Position numbers and translations under genes: made by a program
In this document: positions 1 to 41,498 of the stretch, piece after piece
Layout of the letters: each line of letters starts with the position of its first letter
Numbering within the stretch: position 1 is the first letter of the stretch
NCBI GenBank assembly: GCA_965112155.1
Contig: OZ218099.1
DNA length: 64,000 bases
Reading direction: 5' to 3' (one strand)
Source: Podarcis liolepis
Taxonomy: Eukaryota
The notes under the pieces: generated by a model
Databases searched by the model: none
The model's input: the letters and a program-made list of their open reading frames with translations, nothing else
What the model was told of the DNA's origin: nothing

Positions 1-1207
1 ACAAGCCTGGTAGATGAAGGGAACGCAGTGGATGTAGCCTACCTTGATTTCAGCAAGGCATTTGACAAGGTGCCCCATGATATTCTTGTAAAGAAGCTGG
101 TAAAATGCGGTCTTGACTATGCTACCACTCAGTGGATTTGTAACTGGCTGACTGACCGAACCCAAAGGGTGCTCATCAATGGTTCCTCTTCATCCTGGAG
201 AAGAGTGACTAGTGGGGTGCCACAGGGTTCTGTCTTGGGCCCGGTCTTATTCAACATCTTTATCAACGACTTGGATGATGGACTCAAGGGCATCCTGATC
301 AAATTTGCAGATGACACCAAACTGGGAGGGGTGGCTAACACCCCAGAGGACAGGATCACACTTCAAAACGACCTTGACAGATTAGAGAACTGGGCCAAAA
401 CAAACAAGATGAATTTTAACAGGGAGAAAAGTAAAGTATTGCACTTGGGCAAAAAAAAAAATAAATAAAAATGAGAGGCACAAATACAAGATGGGTGACA
501 CCTGGCTTGAGAGCAGTAGATGTGAAAAGGATCTAGGAGTCTTGGTTGACCACAAACTTGACATGAGCCAACAGTGTGACACGGCAGCTAAAAAAGCCAA
601 AGCAATTCTGGGCTGCATCAATAGGAGTATAGCATCTAGATCAAGGGAAGTAATAGTGCCACTGTATTCTGCTCTGGTCAGACCTCACCTGGAGTACTGT
701 GTCCAGTTCTGGGCACCACAGTTCAAGAAGGACACTGACAAACTGGAACGTGTCCAGAGGAGGGCAACCAAAATGGTCAAAGGCCTGGAAACGATGCCTT
801 ATGAGGAACGGCTAAGGGAGCTGGGCATGTTTAGCCTGGAGAAGAGGAGGTTAAGGGGTGATATGATAGCCATGTTCAAATATATAAAAGGATGTCATAT
901 AGAGGAGGGAGAAAGGTTGTTTTCTGCTGCTCCAGAGCAATGGATCCAAACTACAAGACACGGAGCAATGGATCCAAACTACAAGAAAGAAGATTCCACC
1001 TAAACATTAGGAAGAACTTCCTGACGGTAAGAGCTGTTCAAAAGTGGAATTTGCTGCCAAGGAGTGTGGTGGAGTCTCCTTCTTTGGAGGTCTTTAAGCA
1101 GAGGCTTGACAACCATATGTCAGGAGTGCTCTGATGGTGTTTCCTGCTTGGCAGGGGGTTGGACTCGATGGCCCTTGTGGTCTATTCCAACTCTATGATT
1201 CTATGAA
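1..1207 (+). mobile_element. CR1 LINE, 3' portion (RT domain and 3' UTR), frameshifted; runs off the left edge
   Basis: ORFs 28-468 and 491-1003 carry RT motifs ([26 protein letters not shown]) and the CR1 C-terminus ([17 protein letters not shown]). The element ends in a 3' stem-loop and an ATTCTATG-type tail at ~1191-1207. An A-rich insertion at 451-470 breaks the frame. Confidence 0.95.
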
Positions 1208-1894: not shown

Positions 1895-4800
1895 CCTTGC
1901 AACGAACGCCACTGTCTGCTACTCTCTCCCTGGTTATGTCCCAATGTTGTAAGAAGATCAAAGACACAGTGCAGAACCTAGCTTCAGACCACAAAGACAT
2001 TCACAGCAGTATTTCTCGTGTGGGCAAAGCAATCGATAGGGTGAGTAGGTTTCAGGAGCAAGGTGGGAACCCAAGCATTTAAAACTGAAAACTTGATGAG
2101 TTTTGAGAGCAAATGTTTTTCTTGCATGTGCTCCATCACCCTATATAGAGCTCATTATTGAAACATGGGTCTTTAATGGATTAGTGCAGTGTGCATCTTC
2201 TCTCCTGTATTGTGCTTTGACTACATCCACACTGCCTGATTTTACCAAGCCCACAAATGTCTCCCTGTTTTTCCAACCTGCAGAACTAGTGTCTTTCCTC
2301 TGTGTTGACACTGAAACCTAGAATTCTGCATAAAAGAATACAGTCATACCTCAGGTTGCCGACGCTGTGGGTTGCACGTTTTCGGGTTACAGACATGCTG
2401 AACCCGGAAGTACCGGAATGGGTTACTTCCGGGTTTTGGCGCTCACGCATGCACAGAAGCGCTAAATCATGCTTTGCGCATGCGCAGAAGTGCCAAATCA
2501 CGTCACACGCGTGCACAGACGTGGTGCTGCGGGTTGCGAACGCTGCAGGTTGCGAACATGCCTCCCGCATGGATCACGTTCACAACCCAAGGTTCCACTG
2601 TATTAGATTGTCCAGAGTTCAGTATTTCTAGTAAACACAGGTGTGCTTTGTATTGGCTAAACAAGGGTGGCTCCTGTTTTTTCTTTTTCTTCACAGACAT
2701 GGTTTAAATGGGATTAGTTTTGGTTTTGCGGGGCTAGGAGTAAAAGCATGGGGGGCATTAAGCAGAAGAATCAGAGTTGAATCTTGTGAGAATTTCCTTG
2801 ACTATTGCCAAGGAGAGGGATATTATTTAAGCCTTGATAGTGAACATGACTAGAAACCATTGCAAACTCTGTTCATGCCATGATAATGTGATCTCTCTGC
2901 AGTTGCCAGGATGGCAACCCACCTTGCTTTCCAGCATGCATAATAAGTTCCATCAAATGACTACACCCCCTTTTTAAACTCAAAGCTGAAGAACTAGTGG
3001 CAAGCACTGTGGGAAGCCCAGATCATGAATAAGTGTTTGGAGTTGAAACCAGTTATTCAGCTGTTGTCATTTAAGAAATTGAAGGAAGTTCTCCTGCCTC
3101 AACTGAGGATTGGGCCTAGGGTCCCTCCCCATCAGTACCTATGGAGAGGAAGACTTAACCCATGTGCTTTCCTTTTGCTGTTACATCAAGAGCATCCACA
3201 TTTCTCCAGCACACAACAAACCTTTCTACCTATCCAATTCCTTGCTCTGAGGTTCCTTAGCTCTGTTGCTTGCCTGTCGTCTTTTCTCTCAGACTGTTTA
3301 AATTACTGGAAACAAATTACTGACAAGAATGCCCCTGAATTTGAAAAAAGACTTGCATGGGGTGCAATATGGCTGCCATTACTGTGTCCAAAACTTCAGT
3401 ATACTTCTCTAGCTGTCTGTAGATACTGCCAAATTCATAGTGATATGGGATGACAGCTAGTATTGTACTCAATGCTGATGGAAAGCCACTTATTGTTCTA
3501 GGATCTGGAATACTACTTGTTATGGGGCTTTCTTTAGTGAATGACTGACTCCTTGTTCTGTTCCAGCATTTTGATGCTGATTTGTGTGGCATTGTTCCTG
3601 CTATGGTCTGGGAGTCTCAAGAGAAGCAGATCCTGGTGTTGGCCATCATAGAGCACCTCTACCAACAAGGGATGCTGGGAGTGGCGGAGGAACTGTGTCA
3701 GGTACAGGGGTTTGAGGAGATGGAAGTGCAAATGTTATTTGCATGGTGTATGGGAACCGATAGTTGTATCTCTACATTGTGCCATGGCGCTGCTTGGTAT
3801 TGGCCATTGAGATGTGCCAGGAAAGGTCTCTGTTTACTGCTTGCATATGCAGGAGGATCAGAAGCTTGAACCTCCCAGCCAGTTCCACTGCAAAGTACAA
3901 CAAGCTGCCTATTCTGCTGCCTGTTCTATCCAACCTGCAGAGGATGGATATGTACTTGACAGCCTCCCTCTGGGAATATTTACCTTGCCTTGAGCCTTGT
4001 TCTGATTTGGCTTGCCCTTCCACAGGAATCCACTGTGAATGTGGATGTAGACTTTAAAAAGCCATTCCTGGAACTTAACAGCATATTGGAAGCTCTGCAC
4101 AAACAGGATCTGGAGCCTGCTCTGAGGTAAGAATGATGAGCTATATTCTGTTTCCCCTCTTAGGAAGTACTGTGGGAGAGGAAACAGAGTCCTAACATGA
4201 TGTAGAGCCTATGGCAAGGACCATTGGGGGAACCACACTCCTCATTATCAGTGAGCCTATCCGCTCTACGGGTCTGCCATCTTTTCTCTTCCAACAAGCA
4301 CTGAGAAGTTCTGCTTGTTTTGTTTTCACTCATTATCTTCTACACAAGGCCAGGGTATTCCTGTAATAAGATACCTGAATTTGTGAGCTCACAGCATGCT
4401 GAGAAAATGCTGCTGCAACCTGCCTCAGACCAGGTTGTCCACAAATATGTAGCTTGGATTGGAGTAGCACCCACTTTAAGGGCAACTTTCTATGTAGATG
4501 ATGGCATTGAGCAGTGTTGTCTCTTGCTCAGTTGGGCAGTCTTTCACCGACAGCAGCTGGCAGAAATGAACAGCAATCTGGAGTTCCGGCTGCATCGACT
4601 CCACTTCATTAGGCTCCTTGCTGGCGGTCCAGGCAAGGAGCTAGAGGCCCTGAGCTACGCACGCCATTTCCAGCCCTTTGCTCACCTGCATCAGCAAGGT
4701 GAGGCTGTTTCCAGAAGCCTACTCTGCTACTTGTTCCTTGGGAGGAGCTTTCTTGCCTTTAGGCTGTTTCTCTGGGCCTTGCCGCACCCAACAGGGCTCC

Positions 4801-6536
4801 TATTTTGTTGCTTCAAAGTCTTTGGAGTTTCCCTTTTTAGTAGGGGAAGTCTTGGGAGTTGTTGACTCAGCCTGGTCATTGTTATAGGTATCACCATTTC
4901 CTAATAACTGGTTCCATAACAGGCCAGCCCCGTTAGCAAAAGTATGTTTACCTGAGTGCTGCTTCCTGCATTTTTCATCTGCAGAGATCCAGGTGATGAT
5001 GGGCAGCCTGGTGTACCTGCGCTTGGGCCTTAAGAATTCTCCATATAGGCATCTTCTGGATGAGAGTCAGTGGACTGAGATTTGTGAGATATTCACTCGT
5101 GATGCCTGTGCCCTATTAGGTCTCTCAGTGGAGTCACCTCTGAGTGTCAGGTAAAGCTTGTTATGGGTGGGACTGGCGGTGGATTGAGCAGTGCTGAGCT
5201 ATCTCCTCCCTCCTTCTCTCTTGGCAGCTTTGCTGCAGGATGTGTAGCACTGCCGGTGCTGATGAACATCAAGGCTGTGATTGAGCAGAGACAGTGCACG
5301 GGTGTCTGGAGCCACAAAGATGAGCTGCCTGTGAGTGCCTGGCCCATTCAGGGGTAGGGTGCTATGAGAGAGCTGCAGGGTGGGGATATTTTTGTGGAAG
5401 AAAATTAACAATAACAACCAGGTCATGGGCCTAATTATTTTCTGCTTGTTTTATCAGATTGAAATTGAGCTTGGGATGAAATGCTGGTACCACTCGGTCT
5501 TTGCGTGTCCCATTTTGCGCCAGCAGACAACTGATTCTAATCCACCCATCAAGCTCATCTGTGGGCATGTTATTTCTCGAGATGCCCTTAACAAGCTCAT
5601 CAATGGAGGGAAGTGAGTGGTTTTTACAAACTGTTGTTACTTTCCTCAATTCTGGGAGGCTGTGGATGACGAACTCTTGCCTGAAATCTTGAAGTATCCA
5701 GGGTCTCCTACCTGTGAAGTGCTGTGGTCACCCCGACAGGATTAGATTCCCCACATCTCATTTCCATGTACTGTATTTTTTGCTCTATAAGACACATTTT
5801 TCCCCTCCTAAAAAGTAGGGAAATGTTTGTGCGTCTTATGGAGCGAATGCAGGCTGCGCAGCTATCCCAGAAGCCAGAACAGTGAGAGGGATTGCTGGCC
5901 TTCATCCCGCTGCCCTGAAGAGGCTGCGCAGCTGTCCCAGAAACCAGAAGAGCAAGAGGGATCAGTGCGCACCGATCCCTCTTGCTGTTCTGGCTTCGGA
6001 GATAGCCACACAAAGCCTCTTGAGCGCAGCAGGATCGCTCCTGCATGTTTGTTCAAGGTGCTTTGCATTGCTTTCTTGTTTCTTGTTTTCCTCCTCGCGT
6101 GCGTCTTATAGAACGAAAAATACAGCAGTTTCTCACTATCATTTTATTTTTTGGACTACATGTTAGTTTCACTGTGTCTGCTGCCCTCTGCTGGGTAACT
6201 AGGTCATACTGCAATTGCTATAGTAAGGGGGACCTTAGCACTTCTCCTTGTAGTTTCTTAGTAACTGGCAAGCCCAAGGCCAAATCAGACTTGTTAACAG
6301 GGCAGAGAAGAGAGTGAGGTAGTGGACCAAACACCAGGACTTGCTAGTGGTCTACTGGAAGTATGGGTCTGGGTCAGCTTCCTGCTTATCTGCTTTAGTG
6401 ATCTGGTAGGACTACTTGCCAATGAGAATTCTAAGGCCTTGTTTTGATTCTGATCTTTCTTTCTTTGTGCAGGCTGAAGTGTCCATATTGTCCCATGGAG
6501 CAGAGCCCAGCTGATGGAAAACGCCTAATCTTTTGA
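1895..6536 (+). CDS. RMND5B: RMND5B, CTLH/GID E3 ligase RING subunit (first coding exon is upstream of the window)
   Basis: Exons 1895-2040, 3567-3701, 4026-4126, 4532-4698, 4985-5150, 5228-5330, 5458-5612, 6473-6536 (TGA 6534-6536), all GT-AG and in frame. Peptides [45 protein letters not shown]...[27 protein letters not shown] match RMND5B, and the position next to NHP2 fits B rather than A. Confidence 0.95.
2341..2600. mobile_element. Tc1/mariner (Tigger-like) MITE
   Basis: TA on both sides; imperfect TIRs CAGTCATACCTCAGGTTG / CAACCCAAGGTTCCACTG; CpG-rich interior with short palindromes. Confidence 0.75.
5771..6125. mobile_element. Mariner/pogo-like MITE with internal direct and inverted repeats
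   Basis: TIRs CTGTATTTTTTGCTCTATAAGAC / GTCTTATAGAACGAAAAATACAG, with TA at the left. A related shorter element lies at 59427-59595. Confidence 0.75.
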
Positions 6537-16833: not shown

Positions 16834-19800
16834 ACACATGCAGAGAGAGAGAAACTATTTTATTTAACAGAAATTATATATCATTTACCCGAACTAAAAA
16901 GACTTTTAGATGGTTTACAACATTAATGTCAAATAGACATGATTTAGTGCAAGAACTTTAGGAAACCTCACACAATTACACAATAATTTGGATGTTTTGC
17001 ATTGCAATCCCATGCACCCAGGTAAGTGTGTATGAGATGGCAGCCATAATGTATTTTGTTTTGCTCTCTTAATATATTTAGAGCTTGTTCACTGCCTGCA
17101 TGTGGCGGGATCCCCAAAGAGCAGGGGTGTGTGAAGAAACTGTAGCCCTCCACATGTTGGACTCCAACCCACATCAGTCCCAGGCACATGGCCAGTTGGG
17201 TTTGGGCTGATGGGCATTCTAGTCCAATAATCTCCAGAGGGCCACAGCTTTCCCATCTGTCTCATAAAGTCTGTCTTCTCTCACCACTGGTGAGTGTGCA
17301 TGGGCAGGTGGAATGGACACTATGTGGAATGGGAAGATTTGCAGCCATATGGGGATCCCTTCATATGAGTAAGGTCATCTGGGATGTGTGTGACCACCTA
17401 TGCAATGTAGTCTTTGTTTGCTTCATATACACCTTGGTTATTTTTTTCCTTCTCTCCTGTGACTTTTTAATACATAGTGTGTCATTTTATGTTTTTAGCA
17501 TTGATTATATTGGGGAGGCGGGCTTGGGAAAAAATCTGTCTTGTGTTTCCAAGGAAAGCTCTACAATTTTCTCCTTTTTGAGCTGATCTTTCCTGTCTGG
17601 CATTTCTAACAAATTAAGCCAAGCTAACCTGAATTTCTAGCCGTGGATGAGAAGCTGAGTGTTATTTCTTTGGATGAGAATGAGGGAGTTTTTTGTTTTG
17701 GATTTTCCCTGCCTCTGTACTTGATTGACTTTATTAACTTGATTGACTTTATCCATGTTGCTGGCTCCTTGCTTAAATGCTACACGGGAGCAGCCAGAGC
17801 ACCTTGGCGGAGCCAGCTGCAAGAACCTGAGTTAGTTTTATTGGTAGTACAGGCAAGACCTTGTTGTGTGTGGATAGCAGTGGGAGAGTCTGTGTATTGG
17901 TTTTTAGTATGTGAATATCCTTTGGCAGGTGGGTGAGAGCGACATGACAGTAGTTTCTGGTCACACAAGCAGCTCTGGTCTCCTCCTGGACGTGGGAGGG
18001 GTTCTTCCAGGGCTGCACGGTGGAGAAATGCAGTCAGCTTCAACTACGGTTCCTGCATCTCCTGCTGCTTCAGGTAGGCCTATTCTGCTATTGTTGTGTA
18101 TTTCTTTCTATCCTAGAGTTGGAAGGGGCTTCAGAAGATATCCACCGCTACAGTGTGTAATTTCTGGTCTGCCATTTGTGTTGAGAACAGCAGAGGATGT
18201 GAGGGTCCTGTTTCAAATAATGTGAATAAATCAAGAACATATTCTATGAAAGCTGAGACCTTGGAAGACCAAATATGTAATTTGCATGGCAAAGCCTTTA
18301 GTCAAAGCTTTGCTTGTATGTGTCGGGGCTTTGTGTGATGTTTGATCATGTTACTTTGTGTTATGAATGTTATTGCCTTGATTCTCTTCCTTAAATCACT
18401 TTGTTTGCTTACTTCCCCTTAATCTCATGTTTAGCTTAATGTTCCTTTCCACTTCCTGCATTCTTTTGGTATGTTTGTTCTTGGTATGAGCTTTTGTGTG
18501 CATGGTATCTGAAGTGTGCATGTACACAAAAGCTCATCCCAAGAACAAACTTAGTTGGTCTTTAAGGTGCTACTGGAAGGAATTTTTTATGCACTTTTGT
18601 ATGTATTGAACTGATAGCTTGAGACTTTTATCTGAGCCATAGTGCGTCCTTTCCCCCTGCTCCCCCTTTCCTCCCTCCTTCCCTATCTTTCCCCTGCCCT
18701 CATTGTTAAGCACCTAGTAGTAGGCTGGTGGTGGGGAACCTAATTACGTCCACGACCTCAGCAGTTAGCCCTCTAGGTTGAGATCTATAGGTATAGGGTG
18801 GTATACAGATTTAATAAATAATATTTTCCCCCTTGTTTTGACGTCTTATGGCATCAAGTGCAAGAAAGTTCAAGCAGGAAAAGTTTAATAATAATAAGAG
18901 AAGAAAAAGTGTGAATCTTCCGTTGGAGCCAGGGTTTGAAGCTTGTCACATAATGTCCTATGACGTCAGCTAATTAACCCAAGGAGGCTCAGCCACTTTT
19001 GGATCCAGCTCTCCAGTGTGATCCAATTTCTCACCCCTTGTAAATCCAAAAGGATAATACAAACATAAAGATTGGTGCCAAGTGCAGCACAAAGTACCCT
19101 GAGAATCTCAACTTTTTAAAAAAGTAGTTTTCTGGCCCATTTTAAAACAATGTTAAAAGTATGTAATTCCTGAGGAAAATGCAGGTGTTGGGGAAGTGAT
19201 TGGAAGAAAAATCTTTGTATTCTATACCGGTTGCAGAATTCACCTTCTCTTGGTCCAAATACTCCCAGAGCAGTGTTAACATGGTGCATATACAGGCTTG
19301 GCTTCAGAGTTCTGCATCAGACTTTGTCTGCTCCAGCCCTGCTACATGACATAAGATCTTGATTGATGCCAAATTGCCTTCCTAGCTTGGTCCTCCTTGT
19401 TTTTTAAAGATCATTCTCACAATGATAAACCTTATAAGGAAAAAAATGTGGGCTCCAAGTCTGCTAAACACTCCGGATTCAGCAGAAGACTTGTGTTGAG
19501 CTTCAATGAAAGCCTTTTATACTTTACTAGTTCCCATGGCTCCAGAATCCTGCTATCCCTTGGGCATTGTTGCTCAGCCAAACTTTGCTCACTCCCTTCT
19601 TTCCCCTATCCGATTTAATCTATACCAAAATATTGTGAATTCTGCACACCTTTAAATACTGATAATTGAATTTAGGTTTTGCAAATAAAGGGAAAGCTAT
19701 GAAAACCTCCTATGATTTGTTCAGTGTACGAAAATGTGGTTGTTTTGCCCCAGATTAGGATTTCTTCTAGTATAAAATTCTGCCCTTCCTCTTTTAAAAG

Positions 19801-32249: not shown

Positions 32250-32345
32250 TTTCAGGCAAAGGACATTCCTACCCGTACTTGGAGATACCAGGGTTTGATC
32301 CTGGTCCCTTCTGCAGGCAAAGCAGGTGCTCTGCCATTGAGCCAC
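32250..32345 (-). mobile_element. tRNA-derived SINE head (Squam3-like)
   Basis: The reverse strand reads GTGGCTCAATGGCAGAGCACCTGCTTTGCCTGCAGAAGGGACCAGGATCAAACCCTGG (A and B boxes). Confidence 0.6.
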
Positions 32346-32658
32346 TTCTGGGTTGCCCTGTTCCCAATCCCCACTGCTAGCAAACCTGGTGATATAACCC
32401 AAGACTTCAGCAACCCACTCCTGGCTCACCATTTGGATTGCTGTGGGACTTGGCAGATGTGCAGTACCACATAGACAATTAGAAGCTAGGGATAATTTTT
32501 GGTTAAAGTTCTTTCAAGTCACAGCTGAGAGCATTACCACAACAGATTTCAGGGTTTGAACTTGGCTCCTTTACTACCTGCTCGAACACCTGATCTGATC
32601 TGAAGCTAGCACGTGAGCGAGTGACAAACCCTCTTCCCATCTCATGTACCTCTTGTAG

Positions 32659-40234: not shown

Positions 40235-40591
40235 TGTTATGTTGTGTATTATCGTTCCAGAACAGTTCTGTTCTAGATTCCGAAAGATTTTTTTTTTAAA
40301 TCTGTGTTGGCTTCCTTTTTAGAAAATTCTAAAACTGAAAGAGCATGCAGTTATCTGCAAACATTATTTTGGAGGCAAAAAAAACCCAAAACCCACATGA
40401 TGCCGCTGTTAGTACCCAAGCAAGGTAGCTTTGTTGGTTTCAACACTGGCACAAATGAAGTCTGTTCATGCCTCCCTAGCAGAACACTACTCTCTGAAGC
40501 TGCATCCATTGTACTCACCTTTACCAGTTACCAAGTACAAAATAAAAAAATTCCTTCCAATAGCACCTTAAAGACCAACTAAGTTAGTTCT

Positions 40592-40633
40592 TGGTATGAG
40601 CTTTCGTGTGCATGCACACTTCTTCAGATACCA
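40592..40633 (-). ncRNA. Mirror-image hammerhead ribozyme motif on the minus strand
   Basis: Exact reverse complement of 40634-40675. Confidence 0.8.
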
Positions 40634-40675
40634 TGGTATCTGAAGAAGTGTGCATGCACACGAAAGCTCATACCA
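40634..40675 (+). ncRNA. Minimal type I hammerhead ribozyme motif (Penelope type)
   Basis: UGGUAU (stem I) CUGAAGA A GUGUGC-AU-GCACAC (stem II) GAAA GC UC^ AUACCA (stem I'). All core nucleotides are present, with palindromic AGCU in place of stem III. Confidence 0.8.
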
Positions 40676-41498
40676 AGAACTAACTTAGTTGGTCTTTAAG
40701 GTGCTATTGGAAGGAATTTTTTTATTTTGACTATGGCAGACCAACACGGCTACCTATCTACTACAGTTACCAAGTAGTTATCACTAGGCTTGGCCTAATT
40801 TGGCAAGGGCGTAAGAGATATTGGGAGTTCTCCACCAATAATGATAAATTATTTGTGAATGCCTGATATAAAAGAAGAGTAGATAATGACCACAAGGAAA
40901 GAAAAGGGGAAAACAAATACCACACCACGCTTCGCTTCAATTATACCTGTGAAAACAGGATCACCTTTATGACAAGTCCAGATATAATGACAGCGGCTTT
41001 GCAAAGTACCAGGAAACTGTTAGACTCTGCCTCTTCTGTGTCCCACAGAGTTTGAGCATAATGCAGCAGAAGCTAAAGTTGGACTGGGGAGAAACTGGGG
41101 AGCAGCAGGTGGAGTGTGCAATGCTTGGTGCATATACTATTTTGCAGAGCCCCAGCACCTGGTGGGCTGCTGCCAGATAAAATCCATGTATGGCAGGGGT
41201 GGGAAGCTCAGACCCAGGGCCAAATGTGGCCCTCCAAGCTTCTCTGTGGCCCTAAGGATCCTTCAGATGCCACATCCCCTCCTAATCCACACTTCTCCAT
41301 CCCTCCCCAAGTGATTTGGTATGTCCTTAAGCTAGCTTGCCAGGATGGCGTCGTATGAGTGTAGAAATGTCTGTCTTTTGTGTGGCTGGAATGCGGCCTA
41401 TCATATAAAGGTAATAGTAGCACCTTTTGCTCACCCACTGTCATCTCTAGCCCCATCCACCACTGGCAAATGGCTTCTGGAAGTTTTCCTTTGATATA

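What the first reader, a model, noticed from the sequence alone, without database searches (positions are those of the whole stretch)
40538..40763. Perfect 192-bp palindrome carrying back-to-back intact hammerhead ribozymes, inserted as a 226-bp unit with a 13-bp TSD
Seen: 40538-40729 is a flawless inverted repeat with no spacer, centred on CCA|TGG at 40633/40634, and the unit is flanked by CAGTTACCAAGTA twice. Each strand, starting exactly at the symmetry axis, reads UGGUAU-CUGAAGA-A-GUGUGCAUGCACAC-GAAA-GC-UC^-AUACCA. That is a complete hammerhead core with a 6-bp stem I, a 6-bp stem II and a palindromic AGCU replacing stem III; predicted cleavage is after 40669. Established: Penelope-like retroelements carry such minimal hammerheads in their pLTRs, which are thought to cleave as dimers, and they often insert with an inverted partial repeat. 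Inference: this is a recent, non-coding, ribozyme-only mini-element, possibly a non-autonomous retrozyme-like family, that encodes the same ribozyme whichever strand is transcribed.
Basis: partly seen in the sequence, partly recalled or inferred. Interest (0 to 1): 0.85.

Follow-up and report, generated by a model that had tools for sequence, protein, structure and literature searches.

The report
Abortive Penelope retroelement hairpin insertion
This is a real, recent 226-bp insertion, but it is an ordinary dead-on-arrival fragment of a very abundant Penelope-like retrotransposon, laid down head-to-head in the way already described for that class, not a new ribozyme-only mobile element.

Summary
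Arms 40538-40633 and 40634-40729 are 100% complementary with no spacer. A 34-nt tail follows at 40730-40763, and CAGTTACCAAGTA flanks the unit twice. A minimal type-I hammerhead motif lies on each strand.

A closely related species carries the empty site with one copy of the 13-mer, so this is a genuine, recent insertion.

The anatomy matches the published signature of Penelope-like element (PLE) insertions: extreme 5' truncation, an adjacent inverted 5'-truncated copy, a 30-40-nt tail at one end only, a TSD, and a min-HHR. The family is very abundant in three related species.

Their sense arms, however, often begin at exactly this copy's axis.

Any transcript of the unit carries one sense ribozyme next to its perfect antisense. 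It is predicted to fold into a 94-bp hairpin (-170.8 kcal/mol) rather than a hammerhead. Two of the six stem I pairs come from two axis letters that differ from the usual family sequence.

No Rfam hammerhead model matches.

The scan has flagged many similar palindromes elsewhere in this genome.

Verdict: a new member of a known kind, of low to moderate interest.

The parts
40525..40537 (.). Left copy of the 13-bp target-site duplication, CAGTTACCAAGTA
   Evidence: The empty site in run X3 has the 13-mer once (record 9).
40538..40633 (-). Inverted arm, the antisense copy of the PLE segment. Its outer end (40538) is the 'tail-less' 3' boundary. It carries the hammerhead motif on the minus strand: core 40627-40598, predicted cut after 40598.
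   Evidence: Family depth is 0.7-2 million against 45 in the flanks.
40632..40635 (.). Central CATG. These four letters differ from the usual family sequence, which reads ...TTTCAGT|GTATC before 40636. They are either filler or a 2-nt subfamily variant (TG for GT). They add 2 bp to stem I in each arm.
   Evidence: loose ends at 40631/40636. RNA consensus agreement is 0.78-0.80.
40634..40729 (+). Direct (sense) arm of the PLE segment, starting 6 nt upstream of the CUGAAGA box
40634..40675 (+). Minimal type-I hammerhead motif. Stem I is 40634-40639 with 40670-40675. CUGAAGA is 40640-40646. The unpaired A is 40647. Helix II is 40648-40661. GAA is 40662-40664. A15.1-G-C-U16.1 is 40665-40668. C17 is 40669. 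The predicted cut is 40669|40670.
   Evidence: searches (descriptor; the MFE of the isolated arm forms stems I and II), and the features listed in PMC4209133
40730..40763 (+). 34-nt AC-rich 'tail', present at this end only. It matches the family up to 40759. The last letters, ACTA, fit the family continuation CTGTAACTA with 3 nt missing.
   Evidence: loose ends at 40756/40759. The tail concept is from PMC11167929, PMC8557442 and PMC3846280.
40764..40776 (.). Right copy of the 13-bp target-site duplication
18470..18588 (+). Second, older copy of the same family in the window. The inverted arm is 18470-18504, followed by a 14-nt spacer. The sense arm again starts at (T)GGTATCTGAAG and runs to about 18588 at 91% identity. 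Its hammerhead core is decayed (3-nt deletion, GAAA changed to AAAA).

Best explanation
The unit is a dead-on-arrival product of one integration event of a very abundant Penelope-like retroelement (PLE).

How it most likely formed:
1. The element's GIY-YIG endonuclease made two nicks 13 bp apart in the target, which gives the TSD.
2. DNA synthesis started at the element's two internal reverse-transcription entry sites. One is the tail-less site, now at 40538 on the inverted arm. The other lies 34 nt further 3', now at 40763 on the direct arm.
3. Synthesis ran only about 94-130 nt, to the point 6 nt upstream of the hammerhead's CUGAAGA box.
4. The two halves were joined head-to-head. Either two cDNAs, one primed from each nicked strand, ended at the same RNA 5' end and were joined by an end-to-end template jump. 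Or one cDNA was copied back on itself by self-priming.

The hammerhead is simply part of the PLE segment that lies next to the RT entry sites, so every such short copy carries it. In this locus it is not expected to work. Each transcript has one sense ribozyme, of a type that needs a second copy to form helix III, and that ribozyme is locked against its perfect antisense in a 94-bp hairpin.

Shown here: the insertion, TSD and empty site, the anatomy, family abundance, variable breakpoints in other copies, the recurrent sense-arm start, and the hairpin fold.

Inferred: the order of steps and which joining route was used.
For: Anatomy:
- 96/96-nt perfect arms, a 34-nt tail at one end only, and a 13-bp TSD.

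Insertion status:
- The empty site with a single 13-mer is present in run X3. Both outer junctions are present in X1 contigs.

Family data:
- Word depth inside the unit is 0.7-2.7 million against 41-45 in the flanks in X1, with similar ratios in X3 and X7.
- Both arms share a minor variant, 40560A/40707T, where 94-95% of family depth has G/C. They therefore come from one template, or one arm was copied from the other.
- Other copies show inverted-arm inner ends at 40559, 40565, 40566, 40568, 40570, 40579, 40586, 40590, 40593, 40596, 40606 and 40627.
- At least 5 distinct joints (from 40559, 40565, 40568, 40580, 40602, with 'GT' between) start the sense arm at the same nucleotide as here.

Second copy in the window:
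- Copy 18470-18588 has a different inverted-arm end but the same sense-arm start.

Literature:
- PMC8557442: PLE insertions are highly 5'-truncated, often have an inverted 5'-truncated copy adjacent, and have a 30-40-bp tail often at only one end.
- PMC3846280: describes an inverted pLTR plus a 31-bp tail plus 8-10-bp TSDs, with palindromes at the inverted junction read as self-priming.
- PMC11167929 (Poseidon of Anolis): RT starts at two adjacent internal sites whose spacing is the tail. The protein nicks and extends both strands. The hammerhead lies just upstream of those sites. The minimal template needs sequence 3' of the start site.
[quoted passage not shown] That paper also notes dual min-HHRs on opposite strands 100-700 bp apart.

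Folding:
- The full unit folds to -170.8 kcal/mol as a hairpin. The isolated hammerhead fold is -12.5 kcal/mol.
Against: - No full-length element of this family, with its RT/GIY-YIG ORF, was seen in the window, so the PLE assignment rests on anatomy, the min-HHR and the literature.
- 14-mers of this unit are absent from the published Poseidon_Ac consensus (sequence read), so it is a different PLE family. Its RT entry sites are inferred by analogy, not measured.
- No read or contig spans the axis, so the exact centre rests on the assembly alone.
- Perfect symmetry including the central CATG is not automatically explained by two independent cDNAs. A zero-loop self-priming turn is sterically awkward. 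The joining step is therefore unresolved.
- The recurrent sense-arm start is not explained by simple random truncation.
Confidence: 0.85

Rival explanations
1. A dedicated non-autonomous, ribozyme-only mini-element (retrozyme-like). On this reading the palindromic 226-bp unit is itself transcribed and re-inserted by PLE enzymes, with the hammerhead processing its RNA.
For: - The sense-arm start at the hammerhead's 5' edge recurs in several other copies and in the second copy in the window.
- Earlier notes of this scan list other palindromes with about 89-96-nt arms and 13-bp TSDs. These are unchecked leads.
- A 2026 preprint argues that animal non-LTR retrozymes derive from PLE pLTRs (10.64898/2026.07.22.740005).
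Against: - Retrozymes are tandem direct repeats with same-strand ribozymes. Here the two motifs are on opposite strands, so no unit-length RNA can be cut out.
- The RNA is predicted to be a 94-bp hairpin.
- The inverted-arm breakpoints of other copies are scattered. This fits independent abortive events, not copying of one palindromic master.
- In PAc the template needs sequence 3' of the RT start site that insertions do not carry (PMC11167929).
- Most family contigs and RNA reads continue into non-palindromic upstream sequence.
Confidence: 0.07
2. A fold-back assembly artefact. The true insertion would be a simple 5'-truncated copy, and the inverted arm would have been created by a chimeric read or a mis-assembly.
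For: No contig spans the axis. PLE tandem and inverted structures are known to trouble assemblies (PMC8557442).
Against: - Independent contigs of X1 cross both outer junctions. The left one reads flank then CAAAATAAAAAAA, the outer end of an inverted arm. The right one reads tail then flank. An inversion junction must therefore lie inside the insertion.
- The TSD and the empty site fit a 226-bp insertion.
- Many other copies with inverted-to-direct joints exist in three species.
- The same architecture is documented for PLEs generally.
Confidence: 0.03
3. A foldback or MITE-type DNA transposon with 96-bp terminal inverted repeats, or a hairpin-RNA or miRNA gene.
For: It has perfect inverted repeats flanked by a direct repeat. 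Rfam miRNA hairpin models give sub-threshold hits, for example MIR1222 at 69 bits against a gathering score of 90.
Against: - The unit is asymmetric, with a tail at one end only.
- The family normally occurs as a non-palindromic sequence with its own upstream continuation.
- The outer ends coincide with PLE 3' boundaries.
- All miRNA hits are below gathering and are generic hairpin matches to unrelated families.
- A species with the empty site shows no conserved gene there.
Confidence: 0.03

Closest known systems
Canonical Penelope-like element insertion structure: inverted 5'-truncated copy, direct copy and a 30-40-bp tail (Evgen'ev & Arkhipova; PMC8557442, PMC3846280)
   Same: Head-to-head inverted repeat, extreme 5' truncation, a tail at one end only (34 nt here; 31 bp in Adineta vaga, 34-37 bp in D. 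virilis), a short TSD, and a palindrome at the inverted junction.
   Different: Both halves are cut down to the last 94-130 nt, so nothing remains but the hammerhead-bearing terminal segment. The TSD is 13 bp, against 8-10 bp in the rotifer examples.
Poseidon_Ac (PAc) of Anolis carolinensis, the PLE characterised in vitro (PMC11167929)
   Same: - Same hammerhead layout: CUGANGA, one extra nucleotide, helix II, GAAA, a 2-nt palindrome, then UC^.
- An AC-rich motif (CAACAC) about 70-90 nt downstream of the cut site.
- Two RT entry sites whose spacing equals the tail.
- Extension of both nicked strands, which would give exactly this two-ended product.
   Different: It is a different family: no shared 14-mers. 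In PAc the ORF starts at helix II, whereas here the frame from the ATG in helix II stops after 9 codons. The RT entry sites of this family were not measured.
Minimal hammerheads of metazoan PLEs (min-HHR; Cervera & de la Pena 2014, PMC4209133)
   Same: All four listed hallmarks are present: a nucleotide between 9 and 10.1, G10.1-C11.1, a large helix II and palindromic 15.2-16.2. Helix III is missing, so a dimer is needed. Pairs on opposite strands a few hundred bp apart were already noted in that paper.
   Different: Here the two motifs are back to back with no spacer, and stem I is lengthened to 6 bp by the axis letters.
Animal non-LTR retrozymes (tandem hammerhead repeats giving circular RNAs)
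   Same: A type-I hammerhead related to PLE pLTRs, non-coding, and very abundant.
   Different: The arrangement is not tandem and not same-strand. No pair of cut sites bounds a unit.
L1 5' inversions by twin priming
   Same: The second nicked strand is used as a primer, giving an inverted 5' part within one TSD-flanked insertion.
   Different: In L1 the inverted part comes from a more 5' region of the RNA, so no palindrome forms. Here both halves cover the same segment, because synthesis starts at fixed internal sites.

Membership tests
Penelope-like element insertion | 5'-truncated copy with an adjacent inverted 5'-truncated copy (head-to-head) | tested here: met
   arms 40538-40633 and 40634-40729. 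Definition in PMC8557442 and PMC3846280.
Penelope-like element insertion | 30-40-bp 'tail' extension at one end only | tested here: met
   The 34-nt tail 40730-40763 is absent from the inverted arm's outer end.
Penelope-like element insertion | Target-site duplication, with the empty site holding one copy | tested here: met
   13-bp TSD. Empty site in run X3.
Penelope-like element insertion | Derivation from an element encoding a telomerase-like RT and a GIY-YIG endonuclease | not tested
No full-length copy of this family lies in the window.
Penelope-like element insertion | Outer ends at the family's internal reverse-transcription start sites | tested here: inconclusive
   The geometry matches PAc by analogy. 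Family contigs mostly read through both points, so the ends could not be shown to be family-wide termini.
Hammerhead ribozyme (min-HHR of PLEs) | Core boxes CUGANGA and GAAA, U16.1-H17, G10.1-C11.1, an extra nucleotide between 9 and 10.1, and palindromic 15.2-16.2 | tested here: met
   and reading against the hallmarks listed in PMC4209133.
Hammerhead ribozyme (min-HHR of PLEs) | Match to a curated covariance model (Rfam Hammerhead_1, _3, _II, HH9, HH10) | tested here: not met
   No hammerhead hit at gathering on the window, nor at E<=10 on 501 nt or on the 73-nt arm alone. This is expected, since helix III is absent.
Hammerhead ribozyme (min-HHR of PLEs) | Self-cleavage at the predicted site | not testable with these tools
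   Published min-HHRs cleave poorly, as dimers or only with the PLE protein (PMC4209133, PMC11167929).
Non-LTR retrozyme | Tandem direct repeats, each with a same-strand hammerhead, bounding a unit-length RNA | tested here: not met
   The two motifs are on opposite strands. No tandem array is present.
MITE / foldback DNA transposon | Symmetric terminal inverted repeats as the element's own ends in all copies | tested here: not met
   The tail is asymmetric. Most family members continue into a non-palindromic upstream sequence.
microRNA precursor families | Score at or above the Rfam gathering threshold | tested here: not met
   The best hit is MIR1222 at 69 bits against 90. All hits are generic hairpin matches.

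The most novel reading that the evidence does not exclude
The axis is not an accident. It would mark a defined 5' end of the PLE template RNA, exactly at the 5' edge of hammerhead helix I.

On this reading the mini-palindromes are 'strong-stop-like' run-off products. They are made when synthesis enters at the 5'-proximal copy of the RT entry sites, from both nicked strands. They would then be in vivo footprints of the two-strand priming so far seen only in vitro, and a genome-wide record of template 5' ends.

Two candidate causes sit within one nucleotide of the recurrent start. The family sequence there reads TTCAGT, which is initiator-like. It also reads Y-tract-CAG, which is 3'-splice-site-like, as in D. 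virilis where the intron ends at helix I.

A rare contig whose arms meet at 40670 hints that hammerhead-cleaved RNA is occasionally used as a template.
Probability: 0.3. Interest if true: 0.5.

Novelty: new member of a known kind. Interest (0 to 1): 0.27.

Why it matters
As a single locus it is ordinary. It is one of probably tens of thousands of truncated Penelope fragments in this lizard lineage, and its ribozymes are most likely inert.

Its value is as a clean, datable specimen. The arms are perfect, the TSD is intact, and a sister species has the empty site. It comes from a retroelement class whose integration mechanism is still unresolved.

The specimen shows both internal start sites used in one event, on opposite strands. 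Together with the family-wide hot spot for the sense-arm start, it suggests that a simple census of such mini-insertions could do two things:
- decide between two-strand priming and self-priming;

The locus also marks this PLE family as recently active in this lineage. Finally, it creates a long perfect hairpin that could feed dsRNA pathways if transcribed.

Tried and rejected
- Rfam. There is no hammerhead hit at any threshold. The only hits are sub-threshold miRNA hairpin models, which I reject as generic matches to a palindrome.
- Search for 14-mers of the unit in the supplementary files of PMC11167929. None were found. Reading the Poseidon_Ac consensus shows the same hammerhead layout but a different sequence family.
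- Transcription start from RNA reads (run X23). There are no pile-ups of read starts or ends. Most RNA reads cross 40636 into the usual upstream sequence. With so many intronic copies this is uninformative.
- State of the site in organism F (X7). Contigs stop at 40537 and restart at 40764. Filled, polymorphic or otherwise could not be decided.
- Homodimer folding of the arm RNA. The minimum-energy dimer pairs the self-complementary helix II strands between molecules (-42.0 kcal/mol) rather than forming the classical double hammerhead. I draw no conclusion on activity from this.
- ORFs of 30 aa or more inside the unit, for a look-up of other contigs. There are none, so that route was dropped.
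- The joint 40627->40670 looked like use of hammerhead-cleaved RNA. It is explained by the ATACCA microhomology of stem I (6 letters fit both sides).
- Shared GAAA-to-AAAA change in both arms of copy 18470-18588. This could be a pre-insertion variant or parallel CpG decay, and was not used.

Full report
**1. Observation**

The sequence is as described.
- The repeat finder gives a single inverted pair, 40538-40633 and 40634-40729. The arms are 96 nt, 100% complementary, with no spacer.
- It also gives a 13-nt direct repeat, CAGTTACCAAGTA, at 40525-40537 and 40764-40776.
- Between the palindrome and the right repeat lie 34 non-palindromic letters, 40730-40763.
- A descriptor of my own finds exactly two hits in the 64-kb window, the mirror-image motifs at 40640-40669 (+) and 40627-40598 (-). 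The descriptor asks for CUGANGA, helix II with an optional 5' bulge, GAAA, 0-6 nt, UH, and stem I.

**2. Is it a real insertion?**

Yes. I laid the contigs of three DNA runs and the raw reads of one RNA run on 40380-40920.
- A 1100-nt contig of a closely related species (X3, organism B) runs 40385-40524 and then directly 40764-40920. It skips 239 nt, which is the 226-bp unit plus one 13-mer. This is the empty site.
- Contigs of the window's own species (X1) cross both outer junctions, at 40380-40550 and 40742-40920.
- The left junction reads flank then CAAAATAAAAAAA, the outer end of an inverted arm. The right junction reads tail then flank. A strand switch must therefore exist inside the insertion.
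- This leaves little room for a fold-back assembly artefact, although no contig spans the axis itself.
- In a third species (X7) the contigs stop at both borders, so its state is undetermined.

**3. What family is it?**

Depth inside the unit is 0.7-2.7 million against 41-45 in the flanks in X1. The ratios are similar in X3 and X7. The window itself holds a second, decayed copy at 18470-18588. The segment is thus very abundant. The depth ratio points roughly to 10^4-10^5 copies, although the tool warns that depth is not a copy number.

The family normally continues upstream of 40636 as ...AACTTCTGTTTCAGT|GTATCTGAAG. It continues downstream of the tail as ...GGCTACCTA(T/C)CTGTAACTA... (loose ends). 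It is therefore a piece of a longer, non-palindromic element.

**4. Comparison with the literature**

- Craig et al. 2021 (PMC8557442) describe PLE insertions as highly 5'-truncated, often with an inverted 5'-truncated copy immediately adjacent, and with a 30-40-bp tail often present at only one end.
- Arkhipova et al. 2013 (PMC3846280) describe the same for rotifer elements: an inverted pLTR, a 31-bp tail on one of the inverted pLTRs, and 8-10-bp TSDs confirmed by empty sites. They note palindromes at the inverted junction, which they read as self-priming.
- Frangieh et al. 2024 (PMC11167929) studied Poseidon of Anolis in vitro.
  - Reverse transcription starts at two adjacent internal sites in an AC-rich stem-loop, and the tail is the stretch between them.
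  - The protein nicks and extends both DNA strands.
  - The minimal RNA needs sequence 3' of the start site.
  - The hammerhead sits just upstream and is not needed for insertion.
- The Poseidon_Ac consensus has the same ribozyme layout: CUGAGGA, U, helix II, GAAA, CG, UC^. Its AC-rich motif lies 82-89 nt after the cut site. Here ACCAACAC lies 71-78 nt after the predicted cut, inside the tail.
- The two families share no 14-mers, so this is a different PLE family.

The unit is therefore [inverted copy ending at the tail-less site][direct copy ending at the tail site] within a TSD. This is the canonical PLE product, reduced to its last 94-130 nt.

**5. The hammerhead**

Against the hallmarks listed by Cervera and de la Pena 2014 (PMC4209133), the motif has all of the following:
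- the CUGANGA and GAAA boxes;
- G10.1-C11.1 (40648/40661);
- a long helix II (5 bp plus CAUG);
- palindromic 15.2-16.2 (GC within AGCU);
- C17 (40669).

It lacks helix III, so it belongs to the kind thought to act as dimers. Published examples cleave poorly in vitro, or only with the PLE protein. No Rfam hammerhead model matches, even at E<=10 on the isolated arm. I report that as a membership feature not met, although it is expected for this variant.

- The usual family sequence gives only a 4-bp stem I (GUAU/AUAC). The fifth and sixth pairs here come from letters 40634-40635 (TG), which differ from the family's GT.
- A transcript of either strand carries one sense motif next to its perfect antisense. 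The whole unit is predicted to fold as a 94-bp hairpin at -170.8 kcal/mol, with 0.63 of the ensemble. The isolated hammerhead fold is -12.5 kcal/mol. A dimer-dependent ribozyme locked in such a hairpin is unlikely to act. The same paper already noted pairs of min-HHRs on opposite strands 100-700 bp apart.

**6. Is the axis special?**

Among the best-supported joints shown (15 of 172), the inverted arm ends at 40559, 40565, 40566, 40568, 40570, 40579, 40586, 40590, 40593, 40596, 40606 and 40627. These are scattered over the arm.

The sense arm is not random, however.
- At least five distinct joints (from 40559, 40565, 40568, 40580 and 40602) continue with GT and then 40636. That is the same nucleotide as this copy's axis.
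- The copy at 18470-18588 also starts its sense arm at (T)GGTATC, while its inverted arm ends inside helix II.

The picture is a fixed sense-arm start with a variable inverted-arm end. This locus is the special case where both ends coincide.

Unchecked notes of this scan list further perfect palindromes in this genome, with about 89-96-nt arms and also 760-bp to 3.4-kb ones, and 13-bp TSDs. I use these as leads only.

**7. Mechanism**

Shown: two staggered nicks, inferred from the 13-bp TSD and the empty site, and both outer ends being element 3' boundaries 34 nt apart in element coordinates. Both arms share a minor family variant, 40560A/40707T, against 94-95% G/C in the family.

Inferred route A:
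- The dimeric PLE ribonucleoprotein primes from both nicked strands at its two internal entry sites.
- Both cDNAs run off at the same RNA 5' end.
- One strand then jumps end-to-end onto the other.
- The central CATG is either a TG-for-GT subfamily variant, or two added letters on each cDNA (for example a cap-templated C plus an A).

Inferred route B:
- One cDNA turns back on itself, the self-priming proposed in PMC3846280.
- The intermediate is resolved at the tail boundary.
- This explains the symmetry directly. It needs a specific cut at 40538 and a sterically awkward zero-loop turn.

I cannot decide between the two routes.

Either way the copy lacks the sequence 3' of the start site that the PAc template needs, so it should be dead on arrival. 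This rests on analogy with PAc.

**8. The recurrent start is unexplained**

The family sequence reads TTTCA|GTGTATC at this point.
- It matches an initiator-like TTCAGT, whose A lies one nucleotide upstream of the recurrent start.
- It also matches a pyrimidine tract plus CAG, like a 3' splice site, ending one nucleotide inside.
- In D. virilis Penelope the intron ends at the 5' end of helix I (PMC4209133), and the promoter is an internal LINE-like Inr/DPE promoter 46 nt upstream of that intron (PMC2377424).
- RNA reads of organism F mostly read through the point and show no start pile-up. With so many passively transcribed copies this decides nothing.
- One contig has arms meeting at 40670, the predicted hammerhead cut site. 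Another joint at 40670 is explained by ATACCA microhomology.

**9. Verdict**

The idea of a ribozyme-only, retrozyme-like mobile family that functions from either strand is not supported.

The locus is a new member of a known kind. Modest interest attaches to the clean evidence for one event using both start sites on opposite strands, and to the family-wide hot spot at the ribozyme's 5' edge.

Noticed in passing
window 40687 (family position, right arm): In RNA reads of organism F, A>G appears in 46 of 232 reads with the first mate on the minus strand, and in 0 of 178 with the first mate on the plus strand. It makes up only 0.02-0.04% of DNA contig depth in three species. The context is UAG. 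It could be A-to-I editing of hairpin-forming copies, or one highly expressed copy carrying G.
   Followed up: partly
window 18470-18588: An older copy of the same PLE segment with an inverted arm of only 35 nt and a 14-nt spacer. Its hammerhead core is decayed: 3 nt are deleted in CUGAAGAAG, and GAAA is changed to AAAA in both arms.
   Followed up: yes
window 28-468 (+): An ORF with a clear reverse-transcriptase domain (Pfam RVT_1, E=3.9e-24) at the window's start. The kind of retroelement was not determined. No copy of the hammerhead segment lies next to it.
   Followed up: no
window 4320-4865 (+): A 181-aa ORF with a CTLH domain (E=3.8e-10). It may be a host exon or a processed copy.
   Followed up: no
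window 32280-32351 (-): A tRNA-like sequence just above the Rfam tRNA threshold (33.6 bits against 29, with several non-standard pairs). It is probably a tRNA-derived SINE head or a pseudogene.
   Followed up: no
window 40544 / 40723 (family level, organism F RNA): 82-88 RNA reads leave the family sequence at the T-run and continue as TGTTTTATCCATTCCACTGTTACAGCACAT, with agreement 0.70. This is a second expressed subfamily, or a host transcript holding a variant copy.
   Followed up: no
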